From Macrostomum lignano (lineage: Eukaryota): DNA of 64,000 nt. The position numbers and the translations under genes were made by a program. Within the stretch, counting starts at the first letter, position 1. Each line of letters begins with the position of its first letter. The stretch lies in contig NIVC01000027.1 in assembly GCA_002269645.1 (NCBI GenBank), forward strand, positions 1 through 64,000. Direction: 5' to 3'. Positions 4,594-55,400 of the stretch are shown piece after piece. The notes beneath the pieces are model-generated. The model saw only the letters and a program-made list of their open reading frames with translations. It ran no database searches and was not told the DNA's origin.

Positions 4594-26886
<22,293 letters not shown>

Positions 26887-37723: not shown

Positions 37724-38000
37724 TATAGGCCTACTGTTATGGCAGTCCTTAGCTTATAGCCTTAGCTGGAATTATCCTTGGACTTTTTCTTTTAGGCCTA
37801 TGCTTTTGCATTTTTAGTCTGACAGCCATAAAAATCTATATTGGGGCATTATGACCCTTGACCAAATTAAAAGCTAAAATCATTTTTATAAACAATACCT
37901 CAACCTATAGTATAGGTGTATAGCTATATTGGCTTAAATTCATTTTAGGAAAATTATTGGCCTAATATAATCTTTAAAAGTCTAGGGCCTGCATTATAAG

Positions 38001-38885
38001 CAGTGTTGGGTACCATTAATGAAAATCTTAACTTCTATTAATGGCAAAAGCATTAGCATTAAAATAAAAAATAGTAACTTAATAATTTTTAATTTTGTTA
38101 AGTTAACTAAAAGTTAATTGATAATCATTAATAAGCATTAATCCATTAAACTTAAAGTTAACATAGAAAATATAGAAATCTAGCACTTTTTACAAGACAG
38201 ACTTTACAATGCACTGTCTTTGCTTTGCAGCTTTTCCATCTTTTTAATAAAATATAGAGGTCATCTAAGTGATTTACAAGCTAAAAAGTGATAAATAATA
38301 ATTAAAAAAACGTGTACATATTATACTACTAAAAGTAAACATAGGCCTACTGTAAAAGAAATAACTTATTTATTTGAAACTTGAAGCTAAATAGTTAATA
38401 ATAAAATATGAATAGGAAAGTTGTTTTAGTAGCATTAGTAAGGCAGTAGGCATAGTAGAAAGTTACAAAAGATTAGAAAAGAAGTGAATAAAAACAATCA
38501 ATGCTCACACTCAAGCAATAAAGTTCACAATTGTAATTCATTTTTAAAGTTCATTAGTTAATAAGTTGTTAAATTTGCATGATCATTGTCATAAACAAAG
38601 AGTCAAAAGAGATTAATTAGGCATTTAGGTAAATTCAAACACATTTATAATGTTGTAACTTCTCTTCAGACTTATATTTTTTTTCTTTGCATCTTTGGTC
38701 ATTGACATTACCATTAACATTAATGATGAATTTGTCATTAACTCACAAAATTATTAACATAAATTCATTAATCTGTTAGTTCAAAAAATCCTAATGGCAG
38801 TCTATTAATGTTAATAAAAAATCTTAATGCTTATTAATGCTTATTAATGGATTCTTGCTTATTAATGGACTGGTGCCCAACATTG
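38001..38885. mobile_element. AT-rich hAT-like non-autonomous element
   Basis: Imperfect TIR CAGTGTTGGGTACC ... GGTGCCCAACATTG. Flanks ATTATAAG/ACAGTAAG are at best a decayed 8-bp TSD. An inverted partial copy lies at 41257-41404. Confidence 0.55.
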
Positions 38886-39172
38886 ACAGTAAGCAATAAA
38901 TATAAACAAGGAGAAAAAGGATAAAAGCTGTTCTTAGTCAGTTAGTTCACTATATAGCCAATAGGTTAATATAGAACAAAGTTATTAGATTGCAATAATT
39001 TTGAAATGTTATAAAAAGACTAAAGTCAAGATGCTTAGTTTAGTAAAATTCCTATAAATATTCAATTTAATTTAATACTTAAAACTTAAGCATTGATCTC
39101 TATTTTATAATGCGGAACCCTATTGGAATACAATTTCAGATCCAGCAGATGCGGAGCATAGGGTTCATACAT

Positions 39173-39328
39173 GCGCAACCTAGGGATTCGCCCGGCCATT
39201 TCTATTGGCGACACACACATGTAAGTCGCTATTGGCTGAGAGCAGTCACGTGCCTACTATTCCGTCCAATAGCAACTTACATGTGTGTGTTGCCAATAGA
39301 GATGGCTGGGTGAATCCCTAGGTTGCGC
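39173..39328. repeat. Long inverted repeat (63-bp arms, 30-nt loop)
   Basis: Arms 39173-39235 and 39266-39328 are reverse complements with 5 mismatches. Confidence 0.92.
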
Positions 39329-39636
39329 CCAAGCATGATAGGGTTAATAAATATTAAGCTTAGGCATAATAAATCTTATATATAAATATAATTAATTTTA
39401 CAATCCATAGTATAGCTTGGCACCCAGGGTCCAGATTGTTTAGTACTAGTATACATAGGAACAAGAATCCTATATCAGGTAAATGTAGGCCAGTATACAC
39501 CAAAAAACAAGCCCTAAAATGTAAGCCAAAAATTCTTCCTAAAAAGTCATTTAGTTTTCACAAGTTGAGTTTCCTAAGAAAGGCTTTTGTATGAAAAGTC
39601 TTTTTAAAATATTATAAATATCTTCATTTTAAACAA

Positions 39637-40422
39637 GGCTCATTCCATATAAGCATGGTCGTAACATGACAGGTTATTTTTACTTATAAAATGAAATCTA
39701 ATAATAGAATATACTAAACCAATATTTTAAATGAAAGATTATTTTGTCTAGAATATATTTATAGAGTTTCATATAGATATCATCATTAGTATAGATGCTA
39801 TTAAACCTTAAATGACACTTATGGTCGTAACGACAGGATTTTTGACATATAGAAACTAAAAGGTAAAAGTCTTATAACATTTTTCATTTTTGATATTTTG
39901 CAATACATTTTTTAAATTTGACTAAGAACATCTTTAGAAATCATACTCTTTTATTAGAATATATAAACTCAAAAGGCAACAAAGATACAAAAGAAAAGGC
40001 AGCCTTATGGTCGTAACATTATGGTCGTAACATATTTTTTTCTGTCAATTCAGTAACTTTGAGGTACTAATACATTAAAAATATAATAGATTATTTGGTC
40101 ACCAATGCTTTTATCTGATGATGCAAGTACTATACTTTTATCTATAGTTTGTTTCAACCTTCAAAAGCTTTCTATTTGTTTTTAAAAGGTACAAAATCTT
40201 AATGATGTCTTTTGCTTCGAAAAATGTCCAAATTTTTACAAAAATGACTTTTTGCCAATTGATAACATACTAATCCAACATTTTACCATTCCTTTATTCT
40301 TAGATTGTATATATTGCACAATATAAACATTTGGTAAAAAAATAGGCTAATTAGGCAATGGCAAGCAAAAATATTGACTTTTTTCTATTTTCCAAATATG
40401 TCCATCTTATATGGAATGAGCC
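39637..40422. mobile_element. Non-autonomous DNA transposon (MITE) with 17-bp perfect TIR
   Basis: GGCTCATTCCATATAAG (39637-39653) and CTTATATGGAATGAGCC (40406-40422), flanked by ACAA on both sides (possible 4-bp TSD). Internal ATGGTCGTAAC occurs four times. Confidence 0.8.
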
Positions 40423-41858
40423 ACAAACTTAAATTATACCTATAGAAAGAATGATGAAAAGTGTACGTTTTTAGCAATAAGTTCTACTATTTTTATTTAC
40501 TGTTAATTTTAAAGTAGCAAAAAGTTTATCATTGACTTTTTAGGCGTTATTCCTTTATTTTACATTCTTTACTTTACTTTATTTTATATTACTTTTTGGA
40601 ATCTGGCTTATTTTATATATTATTTTTATTGTTATAAAAATAAAGCAAAGAAGAACAATTTTTAACCATAATTAGTGTAGGTAAAACTTTTGTTTTAAAA
40701 GAATATACTATAAAAAGTAGGCATATTTTAAGCAGCTTTATTTTTATATCATTTTTAAAAAGTTAAACTGAAGTTGAGAAATTTTTATTGTAGCTCTTGA
40801 TTCTTAAATATTGAGTTAAGTCAAGTAGTTAATAAGAATAAATAGCAGTAAATGTCTTTCAAATGTTTCATTATATTTACATTTTATGTTTTTAAATTAT
40901 ATATTTATATTTATAGGTTATAACATAAATTATACATAAGCATTGCGCATAAGCATCACTTTGATTCATTTTCTTTTCTAATATTTTGTAACTTTCTACT
41001 GCACTTGCTAGTGCTATTGAATGAAATTTCCTGTTCATATTTTATTAGTAATTAATTAGCTTTCTAGTTTCAAATAAATAAGTTAGTTATTTTACTTTAT
41101 CTTTTCTTAGTAATATTTTTATACACATTTACTTTTAATTTGTTTCTTTTTAGCTTGTAAATTGCTTGGATGACCTCTCTGTTTTGGCTAAAAAGATGTT
41201 AAATGTAGTTTGCTATTATGAAGTTTGCTTTGAAAAGAAGGGCAAAATTCCCATACTTTCTATGTTAAGATTAATGTATTAATGCTTATTAATGATTATC
41301 AGTAACTTTTAGTCAACTTAAATGAAATTAAGAGTTAACAAGTTAAGATTCTTTGTTTTAATGCTAATGCTTTTGCTCTTAATGTAAGTTAAGATTTTCA
41401 TTAACAGTGGTTATTATTACTCAACTTGATCTTAGGTTAAAACTTTGCTTTGTTTTGGATTCTAAAACCTCATGCTAATATATAATACCTAATACCTAAC
41501 CTAATCGCTCATGATAAACCCTAACCCACTAGACAATAAAAAATGTGCAAACACCATAATAATGCTTGTGGAACTAAACTATAGATTCTTATAAATGAAT
41601 ATTCTATTTACACATCGGTTTATTTTTATACTGAAGACAGATTTTTGGTCCAATATGCCTATGTTCAGAAAGATTGTGTTTAGAAATTGATTGTTGCTTA
41701 ATTGACTTATTCTGTATTTGACCAGATCTAAGATCACAATCAATAGTAATTGTATTTTAATCATTCTACGAGTATTTCCAGAAACCAATCAGATATTACA
41801 GACAATATCAGTTATGCCTGCAGAGATTCAAAAAACTAAAAAGCCACTCGCTATAAAA

Positions 41859-43463
41859 ATGACTGAAGCACATTCTCTGCTAGAGATACAGCGCACAGCT
41901 GCCGCTGAAGCTGAAGCTAAATTAGTAGAAATAGACAGTCAGCTGGAGAAATATTCTGCACTGGAGAAGCGTCTTGCTGAAGTTTCAAGCAGATTTCGCT
42001 CTGAACAATTATTAACATTGTCGCCTGGTTGCTTAGCTAAAGGCACAGTGCTGCACTGTTGCGAAGTTACTATTCGACTTGGCTGTGACTATTATGCTGA
42101 GACTTCTGCAGTGAATGCATTGAAAATTGTTCAACTAAGATGCGATCGATTGAGAGCTAGCAGGAATTTGTTTCTGGTGCGTTCATCTCTTTGTTTCTTT
42201 TGTAATTTAGGGTTTAAAATAGCAAGCACAAGTTACTGCTAATATTAAATTCGTGGTCATCTGATCTGACTGAGTCATTCCTCTTGAAAATGGTAGATTT
42301 GGGCTGATATTAGGCAACGATGGCACCTCACTTGCACCTGACTTGTCCCGATTGGCCGAGCCCTAGCTCCTAACTCTCACTTCACCTTAAATTACATGTG
42401 TGCCATTTAAAAGTGGCTGGGTGATTCTGAAAACTGATCATGCCGCACAGGGAGCCCGAGAATTTCCAGAAGACAGATGTAGCTCACAGATAAACCCATG
42501 TATGTAAATATAAATAAATAACATACAAGCATTTAATATGCAGTTACCATCGAAACGTTTTGATGGGGTAAATCTTTTATTAAGACACTAAGCGTTGGGG
42601 GGGGCAATGCAGAAAAAATCTACCTCATGGCAAAATGACAAATCTTGGCGGACAATTCTCATGGACCCCGCCATACATGCATACTATTCTGACCCTTAAC
42701 TAGAATGCTGTGAAAACTCAGATACGTTAACTCAAGCGTAAACAATTAACAACACAAAACGCAGGCTCGCCAATCTAGCGCGATGGAGAACTGTCGCCTA
42801 CTAGAAGATCTAGGCGCCACAGAAGCTGGCGGCGATATTCGAGAACAGTGGACAAATGAATCTGAAGCCGATTGGGCTATCAAGCATCGTCAGGCAGTTC
42901 GACAACAGAAAATTGAAGAGCGAGAACAGCGAGTGAAAGATTGCGAAGCAACCGGTGCAGTTGATGATGCTAAGATTTGGGCCCGTCTCGACGAACTTGA
43001 GCTTCAAGAAGCGCTAGAAGAGCAAGGATTAACAGACAAGCCGATTAGTAAGTTGAAGTCAAGCAAGTCGGTTAGTTTCGCCCAGCCAGACGAGAATGAT
43101 AGTCTGACTTACCGGCCTAGCGAGCCACCTAATGCTGAAACTATGCGTCAGAGGACAATCAATTTTAGACACATTGGAGTAAGACTTGGTCAGACTAAAG
43201 CTGCCGACTGTGATGATGCTGACTCCCCTGGCGATTGCAGCGAAGCGTCAGTCGCGCCGCTGTACACTAGTCCAGCCGATATTGGTGCTCCTGAGCGGCT
43301 GAAACGACAAGCCTTAAGTCAGAGTCAAGCGCCGGCAGTTAAAGATCGAGTAGTTGAAGCCAATATTGCCACTGCTGCTAATGCTCATCAATCAATTTCC
43401 GAATCCAATAGCCAACGCCCAATGTCGAAATTTCGACAGCAACGTTTGTTAGGGAAACGTTGA
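41859..43463 (+). CDS. URI1: Unconventional prefoldin RPB5 interactor (URI1/Bud27-like); exons 41859-42176 and 42765-43463 (alternative in-frame ATG at 41814)
   Basis: Prefoldin-alpha segment 'YSALEKRL...LAKGTVLHCCEVTIRLGCDYYAETSAVNALKIV', then URI motifs 'DIRE...HR', 'IWARLDELELQE', 'DRVVE' and C-terminal 'MSKFRQQR'. The phase-0 intron CTG|GTGCGT...CGCAG|GCT joins the exons. AATAAA at 43586. Confidence 0.85.
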
Positions 43464-44033
43464 ACTGAGTGTAATTGACTGAATTGATTTATTTTTGTCT
43501 GTTAGCTACTGAATCCGTTGTATTTATGTAATTATTGGAGCGCATTTTAAGACGATTGAAACACTTTCTTCGTTGTTTGTTATTAAATAAATGTTAAGGT
43601 GATTGTGTTTGCTTTTTGAAAGATTTTCTTAGTTACTCTTTGTATCAATATTTTCCGCGATATAGCGTAAAAAAAGATAATAGTGCAACTTGTAATGACT
43701 CAGGAGTCAGGCAGTGTTTGTGGCGTTCAAGAAATAAGGTGTTCATCCTCCAAGTAGGGTGAGACAATATTTGTATGTTTAGAAGCGATCTGATTGCAAC
43801 GTGCACAAGAGCTGCGTGCCTTACGTACATAAGTTGAGTAGCAACATGTACTTACTAATACAATGTACAAGCTTGCACTGGCCAGAGTGGCATTACACAA
43901 CTTTACTAATAGCTCGTTTTAGTTGTAGCAAACTGCATTTTTTAGTTTATTGGAGTTTGTCTTGTATTATTAAATAGTTTTGTAACTAACTGTACAAATT
44001 TATCAAATCGATTCTTTCAGACGATGCATTCAA

Positions 44034-46100
44034 ATGGAGCTTAAAGTGCACTATCAAAAGTTACAGGAGAGATTTGGAGACAACGATTTTGTTAAAGCTT
44101 TAAACGAAGGCTACTGCACTCTGTCGGATGGCTTCCTTACTAGAGAAGTTCGTTTTGTGCTTCAGAAATGCTTGACTGCGGAATTTCTCAACAGCCTCAA
44201 TGAGCTAGACTTTAGCGATAGTTTCACTGCCGCCTTCATCTTTCAGCAGGACTGGCGTATAGGCGATTTTTTTGACAAGTTTAATTCCGAATTGAAAGCG
44301 TACTTCGACAAAGAAAGTACCATACTGTCCGGTATTAATCAAGACGGTGCGGAGAGCGAGGTGAGGCTCTACGAAGTTGAAGATCGGTATCATCGGTTGT
44401 CGAAGGAGTTTTCTAAGTACTATAGTCAAGAATTGGATGGAAGATGGAATTTTTTAAAACTGATTAACAATGTTTTCAAGTTCGAATCTCAGCTGTTAAA
44501 TTCGAGTCGCGACGAATTGCAAAGTCGATCAGCCAAGAAGAGGCATGTCTCATCCGCTCTGTCCAGCGATTCGAAAAGTCTTGTAGCTAGCAAGGTTGCT
44601 CGGCTGTGCGAGCCTTGTATGGTTGGCAGAGGCCCACAGCTAGAAAAAACGTTGGGTTACTTGAAAACTGTTTGCCTCACGCCAGACCGAGCTCAAAAGC
44701 AGATTGATGGAGTGTCAACTCTTGTAAATGAATTTCTTGCTTTGTCTCATCGCGTTTCTGCTATCAACAATTGCTTGGATTATCAGAATCTGTTAGAACT
44801 GGAGAAGAAAGCTCCATTGGAGCTTGTTTATCGGACCTGCTCACAGTTTGAGCAAAGTGGTATGCTTAAAAAGCTTGCAGACCCGATGAAGAAATTGCTA
44901 CACAACTCCCTAGTGATTGAGGAACATGCTCGAGTGGTCCGAGTCGGGTCTAGCACTGCTGGTAAATACTTAAAGCTCCGCGTGCGACCACTCTTTGCCA
45001 AGTTCTTCCAAGTCGTACTAGGCGTTGAACGCGACGGTGATTTGCGCATCGCTGTATTGTCTGCTAAGACTGCGCATAACTTTGAAGACTTGTCGATGGA
45101 GGCCTTGTGCAATGCGGAGCAGTTAACTAAAAATCTACTGGGTTCCAGCTCAATTGACTGGGATGGAAATACTGCCAAACTGTCGCTTCGCTTCGAAAAT
45201 CGGCCGCAGTCATCTAGCAGCGGATCAAAGCCTACTCAGGCCTTTGTACTTTGCGTATTTTTCTTGACGCAACCAAACCCAGGTGGACTGTTGCCGGAGC
45301 AAACAGTCGTCTCGTGCTTGTCCAAGCCAATCGTTTTCATTACGAACGACATCCAGCGCTCGGAGGCTACGGCCGCTATTGAATGGTACGCTTCGGATCG
45401 TCCAGTCTACCCAATAGTTGCCGGAGCTCCCAAGCCATTGACGCTTGATGAAGTAGTTTATCTAATCCAAAATTACATCCTTCGAAAAACTAAGCATCAA
45501 ATCAATGCTGATAGTATTGCGTACTTCCGTGAAAAATGCCGTCTATTGTTATCAGCCGGCGATAGAGTAGTATTTAAAGATTTTATTAAAAAACCTATCA
45601 TTGGAAGTGTGAGCAGTGGTGAGATCAAGCCTCGGTCACTGTGGGAATTCGCATTCTGTTGCGTGAATTTTGTCTCAAATAGCAAATATCTGTGCAAGGC
45701 GATGTTCTCTAACGGACTCGTGTATGGATTTGTAACGCGAGACAAAGCCGATGAACTCCTGAGATCGAATCCGCACCACCCGAACTCGCTTGCTCTCTTA
45801 CGGTTCTCAGAGACCATGGCAACCGTTACCGTGGCGATATGGCGTAACGGTGAAACAATGCACGAAGTGCCAAAGCCGAAGAAGCATTTTGACAATACTT
45901 CGGTGCCTGAGTTTTGTTACACTCCGATTCAACAAGAAAGCGTGCTCAAATATGACGGCACGTTCGCTACCCCGCATGAGCTGAGCTCGTACTTTCCAAA
46001 GGATAGCTATATACCTGGCTACGTTGCGATCAGCAGAGACATGGACTTATTAAGCCTTTGCAGCGGTGAAATACCTGATGATTATATTTTTAGTACTTGA
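44034..46100 (+). CDS. Divergent STAT-family transcription factor, 688 aa, single coding exon
   Basis: N-domain-like FLTREVRFVL; DBD end LSKPIVFITNDIQRSEATAAIEWY (cf. STAT LSLPVVVI..xSQ..ATATxLW); linker VVFKDFIKK...SLWEF; SH2 entry GLVYGFVTRDKADELL and LLRFSE (Arg590); tail GYV with Tyr663. Confidence 0.85.
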   Translation: MELKVHYQKLQERFGDNDFVKALNEGYCTLSDGFLTREVRFVLQKCLTAEFLNSLNELDFSDSFTAAFIFQQDWRIGDFFDKFNSELKAYFDKESTILSGINQDGAESEVRLYEVEDRYHRLSKEFSKYYSQELDGRWNFLKLINNVFKFESQLLNSSRDELQSRSAKKRHVSSALSSDSKSLVASKVARLCEPCMVGRGPQLEKTLGYLKTVCLTPDRAQKQIDGVSTLVNEFLALSHRVSAINNCLDYQNLLELEKKAPLELVYRTCSQFEQSGMLKKLADPMKKLLHNSLVIEEHARVVRVGSSTAGKYLKLRVRPLFAKFFQVVLGVERDGDLRIAVLSAKTAHNFEDLSMEALCNAEQLTKNLLGSSSIDWDGNTAKLSLRFENRPQSSSSGSKPTQAFVLCVFFLTQPNPGGLLPEQTVVSCLSKPIVFITNDIQRSEATAAIEWYASDRPVYPIVAGAPKPLTLDEVVYLIQNYILRKTKHQINADSIAYFREKCRLLLSAGDRVVFKDFIKKPIIGSVSSGEIKPRSLWEFAFCCVNFVSNSKYLCKAMFSNGLVYGFVTRDKADELLRSNPHHPNSLALLRFSETMATVTVAIWRNGETMHEVPKPKKHFDNTSVPEFCYTPIQQESVLKYDGTFATPHELSSYFPKDSYIPGYVAISRDMDLLSLCSGEIPDDYIFST

Positions 46101-46595
46101 CTTGGCTTATCAACAATGTTGAATCGTTTTAGTAAGCCTATTTTCGTATGAAAATTGTTTTACGAGCGTAAAAGGGTTTTGTAAATCGCATTGATGAGAA
46201 CACTTAAAAGTTGTGCATTTCTCTGCCTATATCTGCTCACAACCAAATTAACTCCAAGTCAGTTCAGAGCATACAATTGTCGACTCTTCGGGGTTTTTAA
46301 TATATTATTTTCTACGTATCAAGTCTAATTACGATTTTAATTTCATGAGTAAAACTACGAGTATTTCAATTTATTAAAAAACGGGCAAAAATAGAACCAT
46401 TAAAGTGTTATTCAATTTCCTTTTTCCAACAAAACCGAAGTGCAACTCTTTGTAATGTACTTTGCATGATTCATCATCACACTGTACTAATTTCTCATAA
46501 TCGTTCAAAACTGCCGTTGTGCCGTGGAACGGAGATCATGCTATTGTATATGTAATTAACTTGGCTCCTATTTTAAATTTCTATATGCTGCTTTT

Positions 46596-46775
46596 CTAAT
46601 CACGAATATCATCTTCTAATCACGAATATTGTGTTCTAATCACGAAAATTATTTAATCACGAATATCATCTTCTAATAGTAAGTATTATCTTTTAATCAC
46701 GAAGATACGGCTCGTAATTTTCTAATCACACGATTTTCTAATAACGAATATAACCATTTAATTTTCTAATCGCAA
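46596..46775. repeat. Degenerate short tandem repeat with TTCTAATCACGAATAT core
   Basis: About 7 copies of the TAATCACGA core visible. Confidence 0.7.
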
Positions 46776-47212
46776 ATATAAAATCCTAAATACGTTTTTT
46801 TATCTTGGTTCACACTTCGCAAAAAACTGAAAAAGTCTTAACTTAATCCGATTGCCCAGTTAACTTATGCCCCCTCCACTTGTAAACTGATTGGTGCTTT
46901 ACAACTTTTTTGAATTATACTTAAAAAACTTTATTACCAGGGACTAATAAGATTCTTATCGTTCTTATCGACTGTCGTATCTAAGAGTTGTTTTATTTTA
47001 ATATATTCAATTCTAATTACGACATATGACATACGATGCGAGTGATACTTTATGCCTGCTACCTGTCGTTGGTGAAATTTTCTTGCGTTTTCTAAAAGTT
47101 TTTTGTTACATTCTCAGGAGTTATTTAATTGAAGCAGTTTAGACTAACTTTTTACGAGCTAGTATATTGGAAGTGCTCGGGGTTAGGGTTTCGGTATAAC
47201 TTAATACTGCCC

Positions 47213-48270
47213 CTTATCACAGTTCCCCCTTCTCCAGTGCCCCCCAGTCTCCACAGTTCCCCCTTCTCCAGTGCCCCCCAGTCTCCACAGTTCCCCCTTC
47301 TCCAGTGCCCCCCCAGTCTCCATAGTTCCCCTTCTTCAGTGCCCCCCAGTCTCCACAGTTCCCCCTTCTCCAGTGCCCCCCCCCAGTCTCCACAGTTCCC
47401 CCTTCTCCGGTGCCCCCCCAGTCTCCACAGTTCCCCCTTCTCCGGTGCCCCCCCAGTCTCCACAGTTCCCCCTTCTCCGGTGCCCCCCCAGTCTCCACAG
47501 TTCCCCCTTCTCCGGTGCCCCCCCCAGTCTCCACAGTTCCCCCTTCTTCAGTGCCCCCCCCCAGTCTCCACAGTTCCCCCTTCTCCGGTGCCCCCCCCAG
47601 TCTCCACAGTTCCCCCTTCTCCAGTGCCCCCCCCCAGTCTCCACAGTTCCCCCTTCTCCGGTGCCCCCCCGTCTCCACAGTTCCCCTTCTCCAGTGCCCC
47701 CCCCCAGTCTCCACAGTTCCCCCTTCTCCAGTGCCCCCCCCAGTCTCCACAGTTCCCCCTTCTCCAGTGCCCCCCCCTAGTCTCCACAGTTCCCCCTTCT
47801 CCAGTGCCCCCCAGTCTCCACAGTTCCCCCTTCTCCAGGGCTCTTCTCTTCACAGTGCCCCCGTCTCCCCAATGCTCTTCTCTTCGCAGTGCCTCCTTCT
47901 CTAGTGCTCTTCTCTTCGCAGTGCCTCCTTCTCTAGTGCTCTTCTCTTCGCAGTGCCCCTCTCTTCACATTGTCCCTCTCTTCACAGTTCCCCTCTCTTC
48001 ACAGTGCCCCTCTCTTCACAGTTCCCCTTTCTTCACAGTGCCCCTCTCTTCACAGTGCCCCTCTCTTCACAGTGCCCCTCTCTTCACAGTTCCCCTTTCT
48101 TCACAGTGCCCCTCTCTTCACAGTGCCCCTCTCTTCACAGTGCCCCTCTCTTCACAGTGCCCCTCTCTTCACAGTGCCCCCTTCTCTAGAGCCGCCTTCT
48201 CCACAGTTCCCCTTTTTTACAGTGCCCCGTCTCCTAAATGCCCCCTTCTCCTCATGGCCCCCTTCTCCTC
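47213..48270. repeat. Compound C-rich minisatellite: ~33-36-bp (CAGTCTCCACAGTTCCCCCTTCTCCAGTGCCCCCC)n grading into ~17-19-bp (CTCTCTTCACAGTGCCC)n
   Basis: Directly visible; explains the many Pro/Gly-rich ORFs. Confidence 0.93.
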
Positions 48271-48387
48271 ATGCCCCCCTTCAACACAGTGCCACATTCT
48301 CCCCAATGTCTCCTCTCTGCAGTTGTTTGCAAAGACGGAGCCAAATGCCAAATGACACTATTTATTTTTTCTATCAAATTTTCAGCC

Positions 48388-48840
48388 ATGGAGCGAGTTG
48401 CCTACATGCCGTTTCAAGTGACCTCGGATCACGGCGACACGCGTCGCGAAGAGTATCTAATGTCAACACTGCGCATCAGCGATCAAGATCCTGCACTGTT
48501 TAATTGTTCCTTTAGAGGCCGGCCGATCAGCGGTAAGACTATTCGAGAATTACCCCACGGATGCGTGGGTCATCTGGTCACCCTGCTGCCCAGACCCAGC
48601 GATGCCGAGGTCGTTATTGACGACAACAAAAGCGATGGTCGACAAGTTCGCGTTGAAGAGACTTTTTCTAGCATGTCTGTGTGCAGTCTGGGCAGCAGGC
48701 ACCATCACACGGACAAATTGTCCCAGGCTATTACCAGCTGGATGAAGCTTAGCCGCCTGATTCACGATCCCATTGATAAAGACAGTGTGAATGCTACCAC
48801 TGCTAATGATGATACTACTGAGAATGACAATGCTAAGTAG
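48388..48840 (+). CDS. RNASEH2C: Ribonuclease H2 subunit C (non-catalytic)
   Basis: Motifs MPFQV, CSFRGRPISG...LPHGCVG, VEETF and WMKLSRLIHDP match the RNase H2C pattern (FRGRxLxG...PxGyxG...WxxxaxxIH). ATG lies 2 nt after the acceptor TTTTCAG; a short upstream exon (47026-47071) is possible. Confidence 0.78.
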   Translation: MERVAYMPFQVTSDHGDTRREEYLMSTLRISDQDPALFNCSFRGRPISGKTIRELPHGCVGHLVTLLPRPSDAEVVIDDNKSDGRQVRVEETFSSMSVCSLGSRHHHTDKLSQAITSWMKLSRLIHDPIDKDSVNATTANDDTTENDNAK

Positions 48841-49454
48841 TTTAATTAATAAGAACTCTTACCTAAATTAATGCATGATGATAAATGACTTTAACTTCAG
48901 CGTTACCGTTGCAATCTCTGTAAATTTGTTTCTCCATTGCTGTACTTTAAAAAGTCAATTATGTTCTATATAAATCGTTAAAAAATCAAATCATCTCATA
49001 ACGGTTTTGTTTTAACTTTCCTATTATAATATTTTACATGGGCATAGTTGCATTTTAAAATTGATAACTAATCTATAAGTACATTGTGAAACTTGCATTT
49101 TTCTATAATGTTGCTTTTTATCGAATGATCTGTTGGTCAGTTAAACGTATTCTGTTTAGCTTTTTTATTTTTCGTTTGCCACATGTTAGGTTAAGCTATA
49201 GGAATTAGTTAAGGATAGGCATTAATAATGTGTGAGTCTGACCCTTAGGGCACAAAGAGTGTCCATCCCTGACAATTAGAAAGTCAGGGTCGTTGCACAC
49301 ACTGTGTGAGCGTGTGTGTGAGTGCGTGCTTTGTGTGTAATTTGCCGCCAGCGCTGGTTGTTGTTGGACGCAACAGTCTTGTAAATGTTTAGATATTTAT
49401 TATCTTATTTATACTGCTTTGCAAACACATGCATGCCATTGTTCCAGCCTAATA

Positions 49455-50985
49455 ATGTATCAGCGTCTCTATCGATCCGTCCGATTTCTCTCTGGACTCG
49501 CCGTTCAACGGCAGCAGCAGTTGTCTGCTATCAGCAATTTGACTGGCATTTCTAGAAGCTCTCAACTTTGTAGTCATCGATTGATGTCGTCTACTTCTTC
49601 GGAGGCCGACGCTGGCGCTCCTGGAGTCGGTGGCGAGGCTGATGACGCCCAGAAGCTGGAGCAGCAGCAGCAGGAGGTTGCGGCTCTGGCTAAACGTTGC
49701 TCGGAATTACAAACAGCTATGGATCAGCTGCAGGTGAAGCTTATTTAATTGTTTTTATTGAATTGAATTAAAATTCATGAGAGTCAGGGCCGCCGTGCGA
49801 GTGTGCGTCCCTGTGCGGGCGTGTGTCTGTGTAAATATTCTTGCTTCAATACCTTTCAGGGCCATATTAAACACTGTTGCAGTGTATTCTACTTCTGCAG
49901 AGTAGTAGTATTAGAACATTTTTAAAAATAGTTTGTTTCGTAATCGTATCTAACTTTGAACAGGACAAGTACGTTCGCGCTCTAGCCGAAAGTGAGAACA
50001 CCAGGCGTCGATTGACTAGACAAGCCGAAGAGGCTCGGATATTTGGTATCTCCGCATTCTGCAAGGATCTCCTCGACGTTGCCGACGTTCTGGCTAAGGC
50101 GAACGAGACCGCGCCACCTGAGGCAGATCCCACTCTGGTGGAGGGTCTGCGCATGACTGAGGCCCAGCTCAAACAGGTGAGTAACTGGCTGACTTTGTGG
50201 AGTACCTTTGTTCTTGTGTCCTTAATCAATTGTGATCGTGTCCTTGGTTGGTTGTGAGATTGTGTCCTTGGTTGGTTGTGAGATTGTGTCCTTGGTTGGT
50301 TGTGAGATTGTGTCCTTGGTTAGCTGTGAGATTGTGTCCTTGGTTGGTTGTGAGATTGTGTCCTTGGTTAGCTGTGAGATTGTGTCCTTGGTTGGTTGTG
50401 AGATTGTGTCCTTGGTTAGCTGTGAGATTGTGTCCTTAGTTGGTTGTGAGATTGTGTCCTTATAGTTGGTTTTGAGATCGTGTCCTTAGTTGATTGCGAG
50501 ATCGTGCCCTTAGTTGGTTTTGAGATCGTGTCCTTGGTTAGTTGTGAGATTGTGTCCTTGGTTGGTTGTGAGATTGTGTCCTTGGTTAGCTGTGAGATTG
50601 TGTCCTTAGTTGGTTGTGAGATTGTGTCCTTAGTTGATTGCGAGATCGTGCCCTTAGTTGGTTTTGAGATCGTGTCCTTGATTGGTTATGAGATCGTATC
50701 CTTAGTTTGAGATCGTGCCCTTAGTTTGTTATGAGATCGTGTCCTTGATTAGTTATAAGATCGTGTCATTCCTGGCCACTTCAGGTGTTCCGACGTCACA
50801 AGCTTGAGCCAATAAAACCCGACGTTGGCGAGAAGTTCGACCCGAATCAGCACGAGGCCCTATTCGAAGTGCCCGTTGCCGAGAATTGCCAACCAGGCAC
50901 TGTTGCCGTAGTTACAAAGGTTGGCTACCGTCTGCACGAGAGAACCCTTCGTCCAGCTCTTGTTGGCGTGGTCAAATACACCTGA
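49455..50985 (+). CDS. GRPEL1: Mitochondrial GrpE nucleotide-exchange factor (GRPEL-like); exons 49455-49733, 49964-50176, 50785-50985
   Basis: Arg/Ser-rich mitochondrial-presequence-like N-terminus; DKYVRALAESENTRRR, FCKDLLDVADVL, EGLRMTEAQL, KFDPNQHEALF, GYRLHERTLRPALVGV. All introns phase 0 with GT-AG. AATAAA at 51077. Confidence 0.93.
50225..50770. repeat. 24-bp minisatellite (GAGATTGTGTCCTTGGTTGGTTGT)n in GrpE intron 2
   Basis: Directly visible. Confidence 0.93.
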
Positions 50986-52187
50986 ACATTTTAGTTACAC
51001 CAATAGTTCTAACGGGGTGTTTTGATCGTATATATTATATAGTGTTTGCAATTAATCTGTGCTGGGCTATTTGTTAAATAAATGAGCTTTTATAAAAACC
51101 GTGTGGGAGGAGTATTGATCAAGCACCCTGTCTATTTAGCTTTTCTTTAGGTAAGAACTTAAGTCTAAAGAGTAACTTTTGTCTTTGCATTACTACTAGG
51201 TACTAACTATGCACCCCTCTGATTCAGTAGTATCGTTCGAATGACGGAAGATAAGAAAGTTGCGCTTCTTTGCCATCTCATTGTACGATCCACTTGCAAC
51301 TTATACGCCTTTCGTTGCGTACTGATCGATATATTCAGTCTGTTCTGCATACGATTGTCAAGGTCGTTTTGCCGGTTATCCTTTATTTTTAATAGCTAAT
51401 AATAGGATTTGCATTTGCTCTTGTATGGAACATGAATGTTACTTTGAGCAAATAAACTGAAGCAGCAACGTACGTAAGAAAAAGACTTACTTAAGTTGCT
51501 TCTCGTGAAGTTATTTGATTGTAACTGCAACGAATCAGTTTTGGTTGTTTAACATTTTTCTTCATTTTAATTGAATAAATAAACTACTTGACGGCTTGAC
51601 AGGCACAATATGATTTAAATGTACTGCAACAAATACAAATAACCTGAAAATGAAGGAATGATTGCTCAGAATCTCATGTAAGCTCTTTCATGTACAATGT
51701 TCAATGCATGTTAGAGTACATACATCGTGCATCTCGTCTCTTGGTACATCTTTGACTTTTTCTGAGCTTTCACAATTTTTATTCCCCTTAATGGTTTAAT
51801 TGACGTTTTGATACTACAAAAGTATACAGGCTTTTTCATTAAAACCCGAAATACCCCAAGTTGGCAATGATTAAGATTTGTTAACGGAGAGTTACATATT
51901 CAGCTGAAAATAGCATTAAATACCCATGTAAACAGAAAATTAAGACTGCAGACAGTTGTTTCGTCAATAATTATAATATGCCAGTACGAGCTACTATATA
52001 ATTAAGGTATTTATGAAGGACAATTTACGTACAAGAGCAACAAGCTTTTTGCTGTTGAAAGCTAGCTATTCCCTAAAACTGGGGTTGTTGCTTCGCCGTT
52101 TGAATTGAACGTGCGTGGGCATGCAGACCCAAATCTAAAAATAACATTTTTACACGCCTCAAGTAGGCGTGTTGCTTTCGCATAAGA

Positions 52188-52273
52188 CCACGTCAGCCTT
52201 AGGGAATTCCTAACGGAATCACCCAATAGTGTCATGGCAACTGTCTTGCGCCGACCAATAGAAAGCGACCACA
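52188..52273 (+). promoter_or_regulatory. Unfolded-protein-response elements upstream of GRP94: UPRE and ERSE
   Basis: CCACGTCA at 52188-52195 is the reverse complement of UPRE TGACGTGG. CCAAT-agaaagcga-CCACA at 52255-52273 has the exact ERSE spacing CCAAT-N9-CCAC(G/A). Both lie 150-240 nt upstream of the ATG. Confidence 0.65.
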
Positions 52274-52423
52274 TCTAATTGCGTCTTACTAATCTGCTTT
52301 CCGCGCCAATTTAAACACGAACGCAAGAAGAAAACTTTCTTTTAAACTGTCTTTCTGACTAGTTAATTATATTACAATTAAGTTCTCATTTTGTGTTTCC
52401 TGGCTACAGAAGCATCTTTCACA

Positions 52424-55400
52424 ATGCAAAGAGGATACTTCTACTTTGCATTTACCTTGCTGCTTGTCTTTGGTAAGTGAACCACTGCTCATTTAATTAG
52501 AAATATATCAATTGTAAATTGTATTGACATTGCAAAAATGGTTTCCTGTTGCCTGTTGGTTGGGTCGGGTTTCTTCATTGCTAAAAATTTCTGTGATGTG
52601 CTCTGCAGCTGTTTTTTGTCAAATAGGCCTAGCTATTTTCATAAAACATAATGTTTGCATTAATTAGTTAGCTTAGTAGCTCTTTAAGAATCAGATTTTT
52701 TATTTTAATTTCTAATACTGTCTTTGACTCTTAAATTCTCATAATTGCCTTCTATTGTCAGACATTGACAACAAAAGCCAGTGACAATTTTAGGAAACAG
52801 GAGGCCAAAGGGCATGCTATTATAAGATGTGGCCAAAAATTCTATATCTTTGATGGCATGCCTCTTTTGATTATCTAGTTATAGGTTGCTGCTTTCATTT
52901 TTATTCATACCTTGTCTTAAGCAAAGCTATTATACTAGCTAATCTAAACTAATTGATTTTGAAAGTGTTTAGTTTAAAAATGAATTCAAAAGTAGTTTTC
53001 AAAATCTTTTTTGGCTTGGCTAGACAAATAATAATCTAAAAATGGCTTTCTTTTAAAACTATCAGTATAAAAGTTATCAATTATTGCCTAGTAGTTGCTA
53101 TATACTAATACATATGATTTATATAAATGGTTTATATACTCACCAATATTGAAAAGTCACTTATCCTATATGCCAATAGGCAATTTGTCTTGGACTAGTC
53201 CGAAATAAAAGATGCTAAAAAACTCAAGGGTAGCTTTAATCTATTCAACCTTTTTGCATACTTATCTCCCATTCCTCCTATTTCATTTCTTTACCCAAGT
53301 CTATTGCAACATAGCTAAGTTGTGTCACTTGCAAATATTGGAAGACTTGACCTGCATTCTCAAAACAACAAAAGTGGCAACTATAAATAGAATCTTCCAT
53401 GATGGCACTTTTTAATAATGTTGCTAAGTATATAATAACAAAGTAATGTTTGTTTTCCATTTTCAATATATATGAAGCCAAGCAATAATACAATTCTGTC
53501 CTAATCTGCTTTCTTACCTTGGATTTCACCTGCAGGCATCCTGTCCTCGCTGGTGCCCCCGGCCCAGTCGTCGCAGCAATCTGACGATGCCAGCAAAGTG
53601 ATGGAGCCAACTGGTAGCGACAAAGTTGGCTCCAAAACTGACGACCGCGTGGTCGAACGCGAGGAGCAGGCCATCAAGCTCGATGGTCTCAACGCTGCTC
53701 AAGTTAAAGAGCTTCGCGAAAAGGCCGAGAAGTTCACCTTCCAGGCTGAGGTTGATCGAATGATGAAGCTAATTATCAATTCGCTCTACAAGAACAAGGA
53801 GATCTTCCTTCGCGAGCTCATCTCCAATGCTAGCGATGCCCTGGATAAGATCCGCTTCCTGTCTCTCACTAACAAGGAGGTCCTGTCTGCTACCGACGAC
53901 CTCAGCATCCGCATCAAGGCCGATAAGGACGCGAAGACTTTGCACGTGATTGACACCGGCATCGGCATGACCAAGGAGGATTTAGTGAAGAATCTGGGCA
54001 CAATTGCCAAGTCGGGCACATCGGAATTCTTTAATAAATTCAACGAGGCCAAGTCTCAGACTGAGATGACGGATTTGATTGGCCAGTTTGGTGTTGGATT
54101 TTACAGCGCCTTCCTTGTCGCAGATCGGGTCACCGTCATTACTAAGAATAACGACGACAAGCAGTACATCTGGGAGTCCGATGCCAGCAGCTTCTCTATT
54201 AATGAGGATCCTAGGTGAGAAAATGACTTTAGAGTTATCTTTCAAAGAATTTAAAGGATTTCTAGGCCAATTTAAATGTTTAATAGTCAATTAGACTAGG
54301 TAGTAGAGATTTGTAACAGCACACTCAGATAAGTAAGAAAGCGGTAAACTTTCGTGCTTCAAAGGGCCAGATTGAGAACCTAACATATAATTGCGGGCCA
54401 GAGGAGGGGAGAGAGGTAATAGAGAAGATAGATGGGAGGAGAGCTGAGGGAGAGGAAAGGAGTGAGAATAGAAGAGAAGGAGAGGAGAGATGAAGAGAAG
54501 AGAGAGAAAAAAAGGGGAGGAGAGAGAAGAGAGGAGACTGGAGAGGAGAGGAAAGAAAAAGAGGATATTAGAGAGAAGGGAGCTGAGAAGAGACAAACCT
54601 TGAGCAGGCCGGATTGCTATTGTGAAGTTTCAATGGACCCGAAGACCGGATAGAGAGGCTTTGCGGGGGGGAGTTTTCCGACCCCTGCTCTAAATCCTAC
54701 AACTGCAGGCAAATCACCCGCTTTGCAGAGGCAACACGCTGAAGCGGGGCACCGAGATCATTTTGCACATGAAAGATGAAGGCCTGGACTGGCTGGAGCC
54801 CAGCAGCCTGCGCGATCTCATTGTGAAGTACTCGCAGTTCATCAACTTCCCAATCTACGTGTGGGAGAGTCGCACCGAGACAGTTGAAGAGGCAGCCGAG
54901 AAGTCCGAGGAGAAGAAGGAGAAGAAAGACGAGGACGCCACGGTAGAGGAGGAGAAAGAGAAAGCCGAGCCGAAGAAGGTTGAGAAGACTGTGTGGGACT
55001 GGCGCCTGGTCAACGAGAACAAGCCCATCTGGACCAGGAAGCCGGCCGAGATCACTGACAGCGAGTACAACCAGTTCTTCAAGTCCTTCACGAAGGCTAG
55101 CGAGGATCCTCTGGCCAAGACTCACTTTGTTGCCGAAGGCGAGGTCACATTCAAGAGCATCTTATTCGTCCCTAAGACTGCCGACTTTGACGCCTGGTCG
55201 AACTTTGGCAAGAAAACTGACAACATCAAGATGTACGTTCGACGAGTGTTTATCACCGACAACTTCGAAGAGATGATGCCAAAGTATCTCAGCTTCATCA
55301 AGGGCATTGTTGATTCGGACGATTTGCCATTGAACGTCAGCCGAGAGACTCTGCAGCAGCACAAGCTACTTAAAGTAATCAAGAAGAAACTGGTTCGCAA

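What the first reader, a model, noticed from the sequence alone, without database searches (positions are those of the whole stretch)
44034..46100. Highly divergent intronless STAT with intact SH2 and phosphotyrosine tail but eroded DNA-binding segment
Seen: a 2067-nt uninterrupted ORF among intron-containing neighbours. SH2 Arg590 (LLRFSE) and a STAT5-like GYV Tyr663 are kept, as is the DNA-contact N..Q (ITNDIQ, 45345). The segment corresponding to STAT5 'FRNMSLKRIKR...GAESVTEEKF' reads 'FENRPQSSSSGSKPTQAF' (45186-45263), without the basic cluster or VTEE. The N-domain Trp appears lost and the tail after the Tyr is only about 25 aa. Established: canonical metazoan STAT genes have many introns; the basic/VTEE segment is needed for DNA binding; STATs truncated after the tyrosine act as dominant negatives. 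Inference: a retrocopy-derived, fast-evolving STAT that can still dimerise via pTyr-SH2 but has altered or weak DNA binding and no transactivation domain. It may be a decoy or modulator, or part of a lineage-specific, possibly JAK-independent immune STAT expansion. Alignment was by eye.
Basis: partly seen in the sequence, partly recalled or inferred. Interest (0 to 1): 0.72.

Follow-up and report, generated by a model that had tools for sequence, protein, structure and literature searches.

The report
Divergent intronless STAT gene, flatworm Macrostomum
This is a real but very fast-evolving member of the STAT family of signal-activated transcription factors in the flatworm Macrostomum lignano, one of at least three such intronless-type paralogs; it keeps the parts needed for phosphotyrosine-driven pairing but has changed one DNA-binding motif that is otherwise invariant in the STATs compared.

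Summary
The 2067-nt ORF (44034-46100, +, 688 aa) is real. The window is Macrostomum lignano assembly Mlig_3_7. Pfam and PDB sequence searches with the protein alone find nothing. A full HMMER scan of 1.84 billion proteins finds only two M. lignano paralog groups plus two bona fide STATs. A profile built only from the three M. lignano paralogs hits STAT5B at E 1e-21, then STAT6, STAT3, STAT1 and STAT2, across the DNA-binding, linker and SH2 domains. It is therefore a STAT, closest to STAT5/6.

Confirmed: SH2 Arg590 (LLRFSE), Tyr663 (PGYV, kept in all three paralogs), Asn438/Gln441 (ITNDIQ), a 25-aa tail, and Cys46 at the N-domain Trp position.

The "eroded DNA-binding segment" is only partly right. 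The basic cluster is specific to STAT5, and STAT1 and STAT3 have no more basic residues there than this protein. The real change is the Glu-Glu pair (STAT3 E434/E435), here Thr-Gln. All three paralogs share this change, so it belongs to the clade, not this gene.

A second paralog is also intronless, whereas a clam STAT5B has at least 15 coding exons. Intron loss is therefore old, and no retrocopy scars remain.

Most likely it is a functional, JAK-independent STAT with modified DNA contacts. The decoy reading is not excluded. It is a new member of a known kind, of moderate interest.

The parts
44034..46100 (+). Complete single-exon CDS of a divergent STAT-family protein (688 aa plus stop)
   Evidence: ORF list. 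A gene is called on two M. lignano contigs. A paralog-only profile hits STAT5B at E 1.2e-21.
44034..44510 (+). Residues ~1-160: all-helical N-terminal region, a putative and very divergent STAT N-domain. The W37-equivalent residue is C46 (nt 44169-44171).
   Evidence: hhalign of the M. lignano-only profile against STAT4/STAT2/P0004 N-domains is colinear, with P 0.002-0.012 and probability only 3.5-5%. The paralog P0008 has a sub-threshold Pfam STAT_int hit at E 0.0025. The AF2 model is helical here, with pLDDT 66-84.
44511..44909 (+). Residues ~160-292: predicted helical region where the STAT coiled-coil domain would lie. Only its last helix (from about residue 258-274) is covered by profile matches.
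   Evidence: Helices in the AF2 model. hhalign against canonical coiled-coil domains finds nothing (E 0.4-0.7). The profile match to STAT1 and STAT5 starts at profile position 258-274.
44910..45440 (+). Residues ~293-469: STAT DNA-binding domain. R303 corresponds to STAT3 K340. The segment at residues 387-404 (nt 45192-45245) has T401/Q402 in place of STAT3 E434/E435. T437-N438-x-x-Q441 (nt 45342-45356) corresponds to STAT3 S465-N466-x-x-Q469.
   Evidence: HMMER profile alignment to STAT5B. MAFFT alignment with PDB-verified STAT1, STAT3 and STAT5B sequences, and the site map.
45441..45710 (+). Residues ~470-559: STAT linker domain, helical, including the SLWEF motif that corresponds to canonical F-W-x-W.
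   Evidence: Profile alignment to the STAT5B linker. This is the best-modelled part of the AF2 model, with pLDDT 56-77.
45711..46016 (+). Residues ~560-661: SH2 domain. It includes GLVYGF, R569 (STAT3 K591), and R590-F-S592-E593-T594 (STAT3 R609-F-S611-E612-S613).
   Evidence: These residues are invariant or conservatively replaced in all three paralogs.
46017..46100 (+). Tyrosine motif PGY663VA (the Y663 codon is nt 46020-46022) followed by a 25-aa acidic/hydrophobic C-terminal tail and the stop codon.
   Evidence: GYV is conserved in all three paralogs, 73-85 residues after the SH2 Arg.
44013..44020 (+). Pyrimidine-rich 'ttctttcag' 14 nt upstream of the ATG. It may be a (trans-)splice acceptor. 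The nearest in-frame upstream stop is at 43983-43985.
   Evidence: Read directly from the sequence. 38.8% of M. lignano genes are trans-spliced (PMC5730564). This is inference only.

Best explanation
The ORF encodes a functional, fast-evolving STAT5/6-type STAT of Macrostomum lignano. It is one of at least three paralog groups that arose by duplication of an already intronless ancestral gene.

Proposed mechanism: a tyrosine kinase other than JAK phosphorylates Y663. The phosphotyrosine of one molecule docks into the SH2 pocket (R590, S592, E593, R569) of a partner, either itself or a paralog. The dimer then binds DNA through the retained beta-barrel DNA-binding domain. The base-reading Asn438/Gln441 strand and the K340-equivalent R303 are kept. 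The Glu-Glu minor-groove/backbone element is replaced by Thr-Gln, so site preference or affinity probably differs from canonical GAS binding. The short acidic/hydrophobic tail could act as a minimal activation motif.

Shown here: homology, domain order, and conservation of the key residues. Inferred: phosphorylation, dimerisation, DNA binding, the activating kinase, and the biological role (possibly stress or immune response, by analogy with the planarian stat5 homolog).
For: Identity as a STAT:
- phmmer against 1.84e9 proteins finds only M. lignano paralogs plus two bona fide STATs (E 7.9e-6 and 5e-4).
- A profile of the three M. lignano paralogs alone hits STAT5B at 1.2e-21, STAT6 at 4e-13, STAT3 at 5e-13, STAT1 at 1e-10 and STAT2 at 3e-6, across DBD, linker and SH2.
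- The top ten Foldseek hits for the model are all STATs, with E down to 3.9e-9.

Key residues kept:
- R303 = STAT3 K340.
- T437/N438/Q441 = STAT3 S465/N466/Q469.
- R569 = K591, R590 = R609, S592 = S611, E593 = E612.
- GYV tyrosine is conserved in three paralogs that share only 25-28% identity.

Other support:
- The ORF is intact, and genes are called on both assembly copies. The GenBank annotation of this assembly is transcript-based (PMC5730564).
- DBD charge is comparable to STAT3.
- JAK is reported absent in flatworms (PMC4557010).
- A planarian stat5 homolog is induced in the dsRNA response (PMC8797187).
- Stat5b-type motifs mark accessible chromatin in flatworms, including M. lignano (PMC11398382).
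Against: - No Pfam domain reaches even E 10 with the protein alone.
- The Glu-Glu pair, invariant in the five canonical STATs compared, is T401/Q402. The E434A/E435A change makes STAT3 dominant-negative (PMC2212906).
- STAT3 R382, R414, R417 and R423 align to non-basic residues, although the alignment is unreliable there.
- Only 15 of 33 canonical-invariant columns are kept.
- The N-domain and coiled coil are not demonstrable by sequence.
- The structure model has low confidence (pLDDT 49.5), and its alignment contained two STATs, so the Foldseek result is not independent.
- There is no direct expression, phosphorylation or DNA-binding data.
- No orthologs from other flatworms could be retrieved.
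Confidence: 0.6

Rival explanations
1. Natural decoy or dominant-negative STAT. The protein is phosphorylated and heterodimerises with a DNA-binding-competent STAT paralog. Because the Glu-Glu element is lost and the tail is short, the heterodimer binds DNA poorly or cannot activate transcription, which damps signalling.
For: T401/Q402 sit at STAT3 E434/E435, and E434A/E435A is the classic dominant-negative STAT3D (PMC2212906). The tail is only 25 aa, the shortest of the three paralogs. The SH2 domain and Tyr are intact. M. lignano has a gene whose best human match is STAT5A, which could be a partner (PMC5946080).
Against: The Glu-to-Gln change and the non-acidic neighbour are shared by all three divergent paralogs, so they cannot all be decoys unless a separate canonical STAT exists, and this was not verified here. 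Asn438/Gln441 and R303 are conserved, which would be unnecessary in a pure decoy. The DBD net charge equals that of STAT3. The tail is acidic and hydrophobic, like a small activation motif.
Confidence: 0.2
2. A STAT-derived protein that has left transcription. It would work as a cytoplasmic SH2 scaffold or adaptor in tyrosine-kinase signalling, with the DNA-binding fold kept only as structure.
For: There is extreme divergence outside SH2 and linker. In the DBD 4 of 9 canonical-invariant columns are kept, against 9 of 15 in SH2. No Pfam STAT_bind hit. The coiled coil, which carries import and partner surfaces in canonical STATs, is unrecognisable.
Against: The most conserved block among the three paralogs outside SH2 is precisely the DNA-reading strand S-x-P-V-V-F-I-T-N-D-x-Q. 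The tool chose this block as the family's signature pattern.
Confidence: 0.12
3. A non-functional processed pseudogene or decaying retrocopy that still happens to have an open frame.
For: It is intronless. A LINE with endonuclease, RT and RNase H ORFs lies 28 kb upstream, so retroposition machinery exists in this genome. The sequence is very divergent.
Against: A 688-codon open frame at 45% GC would not survive the amount of change seen (about 20-24% identity to canonical STATs) without selection. The functional residues are selectively retained across paralogs. There is no poly(A) tract after the ORF. The intronless state is shared with a 28%-identical paralog, so it is ancient.
Confidence: 0.04

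Closest known systems
Vertebrate STAT5A/STAT5B (PDB 6mbz, 6mbw, 1y1u, 7tva)
   Same: They are the best profile match (E 1e-21 to 3e-20) over DBD, linker and SH2. They share the short a-b loop without the STAT1/3 'CMPxHPxRP' insert. The G-Y-V tyrosine motif and the 73-residue Arg-to-Tyr spacing resemble STAT5, which has 76 (spacing measured; the STAT5 numbers are from established knowledge).
   Different: Identity is only about 24% in the best-aligned 233 columns. SVTEEKF becomes KPTQAF. STAT5 has His where this protein has the STAT1/3-like Asn438. The STAT5 basic cluster (8 K/R) is absent. The tail is 25 aa instead of a long transactivation domain. The gene has no introns.
M. lignano paralogs: Mlig018849 (PAA55342.1/PAA60097.1, 'hypothetical protein') and A0A1I8HF71/A0A1I8GXG3 ('SH2 domain-containing protein')
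   Same: They have the same architecture and share derived states: E435 to Q, V463 to F, FIT(N/H)DxQ, ALLRFSET/FLLRFSET and GYV. They form a clade with 85% bootstrap support. Mlig018849 is also a single uninterrupted ORF.
   Different: Identity is only 25-28%. The paralogs have longer tails (77 and 46 aa). P0006 keeps more basic residues in the e-f loop (K386, R390). P0008 lacks most of the linker in the available model.
Caenorhabditis elegans STA-1/STA-2 and Dictyostelium STATs (JAK-independent, divergent STATs)
   Same: They are STATs that function in lineages without JAK, are strongly divergent, and in some cases lack N-terminal or activation domains (established knowledge, not tested here). 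Dictyostelium STATa is a weak hit of the paralog profile (E 0.023).
   Different: No specific sequence relationship was shown. These are analogies of evolutionary situation, not orthologs.
STAT3D (STAT3 E434A/E435A), an engineered dominant-negative
   Same: The same two positions are non-acidic here, T401/Q402 (PMC2212906).
   Different: This is a natural protein. Gln rather than Ala sits at the second position and is conserved in all three paralogs, with many co-varying changes around it. The effect on DNA binding is unknown.
Planarian stat5 homolog (Schmidtea mediterranea)
   Same: It is a flatworm STAT reported as up-regulated in the dsRNA response after adar knockdown (PMC8797187). This shows that STATs exist and respond to stimuli in the phylum.

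Membership tests
STAT transcription factors | SH2 domain with the phosphotyrosine-binding Arg (STAT3 R609) and pocket residues K591, S611, E612 | tested here: met
   R590, R569, S592 and E593 in GFVTRD...LLRFSET. The paralog-only profile aligns through the SH2 of STAT5B at E 1.2e-21.
STAT transcription factors | STAT linker domain between the DBD and SH2 | tested here: met
   The profile alignment is continuous through the STAT5B linker. The hits that phmmer found (P0004, P0005) carry Pfam STAT_linker exactly where they match the query at residues 427-597.
STAT transcription factors | STAT DNA-binding domain with the base-contacting S/T-N-x-x-Q strand | tested here: met
   SKPIVFITNDIQ aligns to STAT3 [12 protein letters not shown], giving T437/N438/Q441. 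The profile match starts at the first DBD strand, about residue 293.
STAT transcription factors | Conserved Glu-Glu of the 'VTEE' element (STAT3 E434/E435), needed for DNA binding | tested here: not met
   T401/Q402 here, and A/Q and H/Q in the paralogs. The pair is invariant (EE) in STAT1, STAT3, STAT5B, the Mactra STAT5B and P0004.
STAT transcription factors | C-terminal tyrosine phosphorylation site about 75-100 residues after the SH2 Arg | tested here: met
   Y663 lies in PGYV, 73 residues after R590. GYV is conserved in all three paralogs. Actual phosphorylation cannot be tested with these tools.
STAT transcription factors | Four-helix coiled-coil domain (Pfam STAT_alpha) | tested here: inconclusive
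   The region is predicted helical. hhalign against canonical coiled-coil domains gives E 0.4-0.7, and only the last helix is covered by profile hits.
STAT transcription factors | N-terminal interaction domain (Pfam STAT_int) with the invariant Trp (STAT1 W37) | tested here: inconclusive
   The hhalign alignment is colinear with P 0.002-0.012 but probability 3.5-5%. The Trp position is C46; it is also non-Trp (Thr) in the bona fide STAT P0004.
STAT transcription factors | Passes Pfam gathering thresholds for STAT_int, STAT_alpha, STAT_bind, STAT_linker or SH2 | tested here: not met
   There are no Pfam hits even at E<=10. Membership rests on profile searches, not on the curated models.
STAT transcription factors | Activation by an upstream JAK kinase | not testable with these tools
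   No M. lignano proteome or genome search was available. The literature states that JAKs are absent in flatworms (PMC4557010).
Processed retrocopy | Lacks the introns of the parental gene | tested here: met
   A single 2067-nt ORF, against at least 15 coding exons over 31 kb in the Mactra STAT5B gene.
Processed retrocopy | Poly(A) remnant and target-site duplications at the insertion | tested here: not met
   There is no A-tract after the stop codon or the putative ATTAAA signal. Target-site duplications were not searched for systematically.
Processed retrocopy | An intron-containing parent gene in the same genome | not testable with these tools
   Only two paralog loci could be fetched, and the one with DNA (L003) is also intronless. 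The P0008/P0003 locus is not on record.

The most novel reading that the evidence does not exclude
Macrostomid flatworms, which reportedly lack JAK, carry a private radiation of intronless STATs. In this radiation the otherwise invariant Glu-Glu DNA-binding element has been rewired to x-Gln. That could give a new DNA-site specificity, or, for this shortest-tailed member, a natural STAT3D-like inhibitor that tunes its paralogs. It would be a self-contained STAT network driven by non-JAK tyrosine kinases.
Probability: 0.2. Interest if true: 0.6.

Novelty: new member of a known kind. Interest (0 to 1): 0.36.

Why it matters
STATs are central to cytokine, immune and stem-cell signalling, and how they work in animals without JAK is known mainly from nematodes and slime moulds. 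This gene and its two paralog groups are annotated only as 'hypothetical' or 'SH2 domain-containing' proteins and are missed by Pfam. Flatworm STAT content is therefore probably under-counted in comparative surveys.

M. lignano is transgenic-tractable and amenable to RNAi. The family therefore offers a testable case of how STAT DNA recognition and activation evolve when the canonical kinase is absent and a motif thought essential for DNA binding is replaced.

It is still a STAT with the standard architecture. The result extends a known family and does not reveal a new kind of system.

Tried and rejected
1. Pfam hmmscan and PDB phmmer with the single protein gave no hits.
2. The search for homologous proteins was run three times, with the protein, the paralog alignment and a trimmed P0004. 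Each run returned only the query itself, so the word pre-filter was too insensitive for this family.
3. Single-sequence AlphaFold2 was unusable (pLDDT 33). The 5-sequence run gave pLDDT 49.5 and pTM 0.28. That is enough for Foldseek to rank STATs first, but TM-scores were 0.16-0.26, so no residue-level structural conclusions were drawn.
4. The metagenome scan with paralog-derived patterns produced 208 pattern matches, none confirmed.
5. Profile-profile tests gave no signal for the coiled coil and only weak signal for the N-domain.
6. I tried to use the second genome copy (99.25% identical) as evidence of constraint. There are 0 differences in the CDS, but substitutions between the copies cluster at 40.4-41.7 kb and the whole 42.3-50 kb stretch is almost identical.
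7. I looked for the genomic locus of the third paralog (P0008/P0003). It is not on record.
8. I looked for the M. lignano gene ID behind the 'STAT5A' entry in the ageing RNA-seq paper. The supplements give only human symbols.
9. Rejected: that the 'basic cluster' is a general STAT requirement. STAT1 and STAT3 have the same number of K/R in that segment as the query.
Full report
**Observation**

The window carries an uninterrupted ATG-to-stop ORF at 44034-46100 on the + strand, 688 aa. A gene with this product, called with two extra N-terminal residues as a 5'-partial model, is on record on two contigs of assembly GCA_002269645.1: NIVC01000027.1 and NIVC01002711.1. NIVC00000000 is the Mlig_3_7 assembly of the free-living flatworm Macrostomum lignano (PMC5730564).

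The two contigs are 99.25% identical over 10.8 kb. This fits the known chromosome duplication of the sequenced DV1 line (PMC5730564).

Three of the four flanking genes (prefoldin-domain, GrpE, HSP90) have introns. RNase H2 subunit C does not.

**Is it a STAT?**

An exhaustive phmmer scan of 1.84 billion representative proteins found only four relatives.
- Two are M. lignano proteins: P0002/P0006, which is Mlig018849 and annotated 'hypothetical protein', and P0003/P0008, annotated 'SH2 domain-containing protein'.
- Two are bona fide STATs. One is a metatranscriptome-like contig protein with Pfam STAT_int, STAT_linker and SH2 (P0004, E 7.9e-6). The other is STAT5B of the clam Mactra antiquata (P0005, E 5e-4).

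A profile built from the three M. lignano proteins alone, so not circular, matched the following:

| PDB target | E-value |
|---|---|
| STAT5B | 1.2e-21 |
| STAT5A | 2e-20 |
| STAT6 | 4e-13 |
| STAT3 | 5e-13 |
| STAT1 | 1e-10 |
| STAT2 | 3e-6 |

These are continuous alignments from the last coiled-coil helix through the DNA-binding domain, the linker and the SH2 domain.

A low-confidence AlphaFold2 model (pLDDT 49.5, 5-sequence alignment) still retrieved only STATs as its top ten Foldseek matches, with E down to 3.9e-9. TM-scores were 0.16-0.26, and the input alignment contained two STATs, so I count this as weak support only.

Homology to STATs, nearest to the STAT5/6 type, is therefore secure.

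**Domain by domain**

I verified human STAT3 (127-327 and 321-715) and STAT1 segments against PDB chains. I took STAT5B from the HMMER output and aligned them with the query, its paralogs and the two invertebrate STATs.

- **SH2 pocket: intact.** R569 = STAT3 K591, R590 = R609, S592 = S611, E593 = E612, T594 = S613.
- **Tyrosine motif: conserved.** G-Y-V is kept in all three paralogs despite 25-28% identity, and lies 73-85 residues after the SH2 Arg.
- **DNA-reading strand: well kept.** SKPIVFITNDIQRSEATAAIEWY aligns with STAT3 [23 protein letters not shown]. N438 = N466, Q441 = Q469 and T437 = S465. R303 aligns with K340.
- **Glu-Glu pair: lost.** The pair is invariant in all five canonical STATs compared (STAT3 E434/E435). 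It is T401/Q402 here, A/Q in P0006 and H/Q in P0008. The E434A/E435A double mutant is the classical dominant-negative STAT3D (PMC2212906).
- **Basic cluster: not a real loss.** In that segment the query has 4 K/R and 1 D/E. STAT1 and STAT3 have 4 K/R and 5 D/E, and STAT5B has 8 K/R and 4 D/E. The DBD pI is 8.5 against 8.3 for STAT3.
- **N-terminus: suggestive, not proven.** It aligns colinearly with STAT N-domains only weakly (hhalign P 0.002-0.012, probability 3.5-5%). In that alignment the tetramerisation Trp (W37) is C46. The bona fide STAT P0004 also lacks that Trp.
- **Coiled coil: undetectable by sequence.** hhalign gives E 0.4-0.7, although the region is predicted helical.

**Gene structure and family history**

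The paralog Mlig018849 is also one uninterrupted ORF of 2223 nt. The Mactra STAT5B gene has at least 15 coding exons spread over 31 kb. M. lignano genes average 4.9 introns (PMC5730564).

In a neighbour-joining tree on 233 ungapped columns, the three M. lignano proteins form a clade (85% bootstrap). The window gene is sister to Mlig018849 (92%). Long-branch attraction cannot be excluded.

The simplest history is an old loss of all coding introns, plausibly by retroposition, followed by duplication and rapid divergence. There is no poly(A) remnant after the ORF, so there is nothing to indicate a recent retrocopy. A non-LTR retrotransposon with endonuclease, RT and RNase H ORFs lies at 12.7-16.5 kb, which shows only that the retroposition machinery exists in this genome.

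**Function**

The most likely reading is a working STAT, with three steps:
1. Y663 is phosphorylated.
2. Two molecules dimerise reciprocally through phosphotyrosine and SH2.
3. The dimer binds DNA through the retained Asn/Gln strand. The minor-groove/backbone element is changed, so affinity or site preference may be shifted.

The kinase is probably not a JAK, since JAKs are reported absent from flatworms (PMC4557010). I could not check this in the genome.

The 25-aa tail (VAISRDMDLLSLCSGEIPDDYIFST) has 5 acidic, 1 basic and 10 hydrophobic residues. Its IPxD motif aligns with the C-terminus of Mlig018849. 'No transactivation domain' is therefore not established.

Context from the literature:
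- A planarian stat5 homolog is induced in the dsRNA response (PMC8797187).
- Stat5b-type motifs mark accessible chromatin in three flatworms, including M. lignano (PMC11398382).
- An M. lignano gene with best human match STAT5A appears in ageing RNA-seq (PMC5946080). I could not tell which gene that is.

It is weakened by two points. The EE change is common to the whole clade, and the DNA-reading strand is the most conserved block outside SH2.

**Verdict**

This is a new, unannotated and very divergent member of a known family, belonging to a Macrostomum-lineage STAT expansion, and not a new kind of system. Interest is moderate. It matters mainly for the evolution of JAK-less STAT signalling, and as a warning that domain-model surveys under-count flatworm STATs.

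No step had to be referred.

Noticed in passing
window 12673-16466 (+): ORFs of a non-LTR (LINE-type) retrotransposon. An endonuclease ORF (Pfam Exo_endo_phos_2, E 3e-21) lies at 12673-13752. An overlapping 940-aa ORF with RVT_1 (6e-27) and RNase_H (2.5e-10) lies at 13644-16466. The long ORFs suggest a young copy.
   Followed up: partly
window 47218-48278; 50234-50767; 46594-46703: The first interval holds C-rich tandem arrays (periods 17, 37 and 51 nt) that create spurious Pro-rich ORFs of up to 408 aa on both strands. The second is a 24-nt x 22 array. The third is a 20-nt x 5.7 array in the STAT gene's 3' flank. These arrays carry most of the indel differences between the two assembly copies.
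   Followed up: partly
window ~41800-56100 (+): Five consecutive genes lie on the same strand: prefoldin-domain protein, the STAT, RNase H2 subunit C, GrpE and HSP90. Three of them are chaperone-related. M. lignano has polycistronic trans-spliced precursors, so co-transcription is conceivable.
   Followed up: no
L002 (NIVC01002711.1) vs window 40423-51226: A second assembly copy is 99.25% identical. Substitutions cluster in the AT-rich stretch at 40.4-41.7 kb, while 42.3-50 kb is almost identical. This is probably the DV1-line chromosome duplication.
   Followed up: yes
window 31299-32662, both strands: Several overlapping ORFs of 300-446 aa lie on both strands with no Pfam match. The region has 55% GC and strong AT skew (+0.35). 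This looks like a repeat or low-complexity artefact, not genes.
   Followed up: no
window 21082-22325 (+): Three overlapping long ORFs lie here. The 342-aa one gives only repeat-type, zero-stretch Pfam hits (ALTTAQ_rpt and others). It is likely a low-complexity repeat.
   Followed up: no
window 38000-42000 and 62000-64000: 38-42 kb is a very AT-rich block (GC 27-28%). The last 2 kb of the window show extreme strand skews (GC skew -0.55, AT skew -0.64), suggesting a simple-sequence repeat.
   Followed up: no
L004 (JGI 3300036281, Ga0373523_00230): P0004 is the closest bona fide STAT to the query. It sits on an intron-free 4.3-kb contig (probably a transcript) of unknown organism. It has no close relatives in the word-indexed database and also lacks the N-domain Trp (Thr instead). 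It groups with the clam STAT5B (86% bootstrap).
   Followed up: partly
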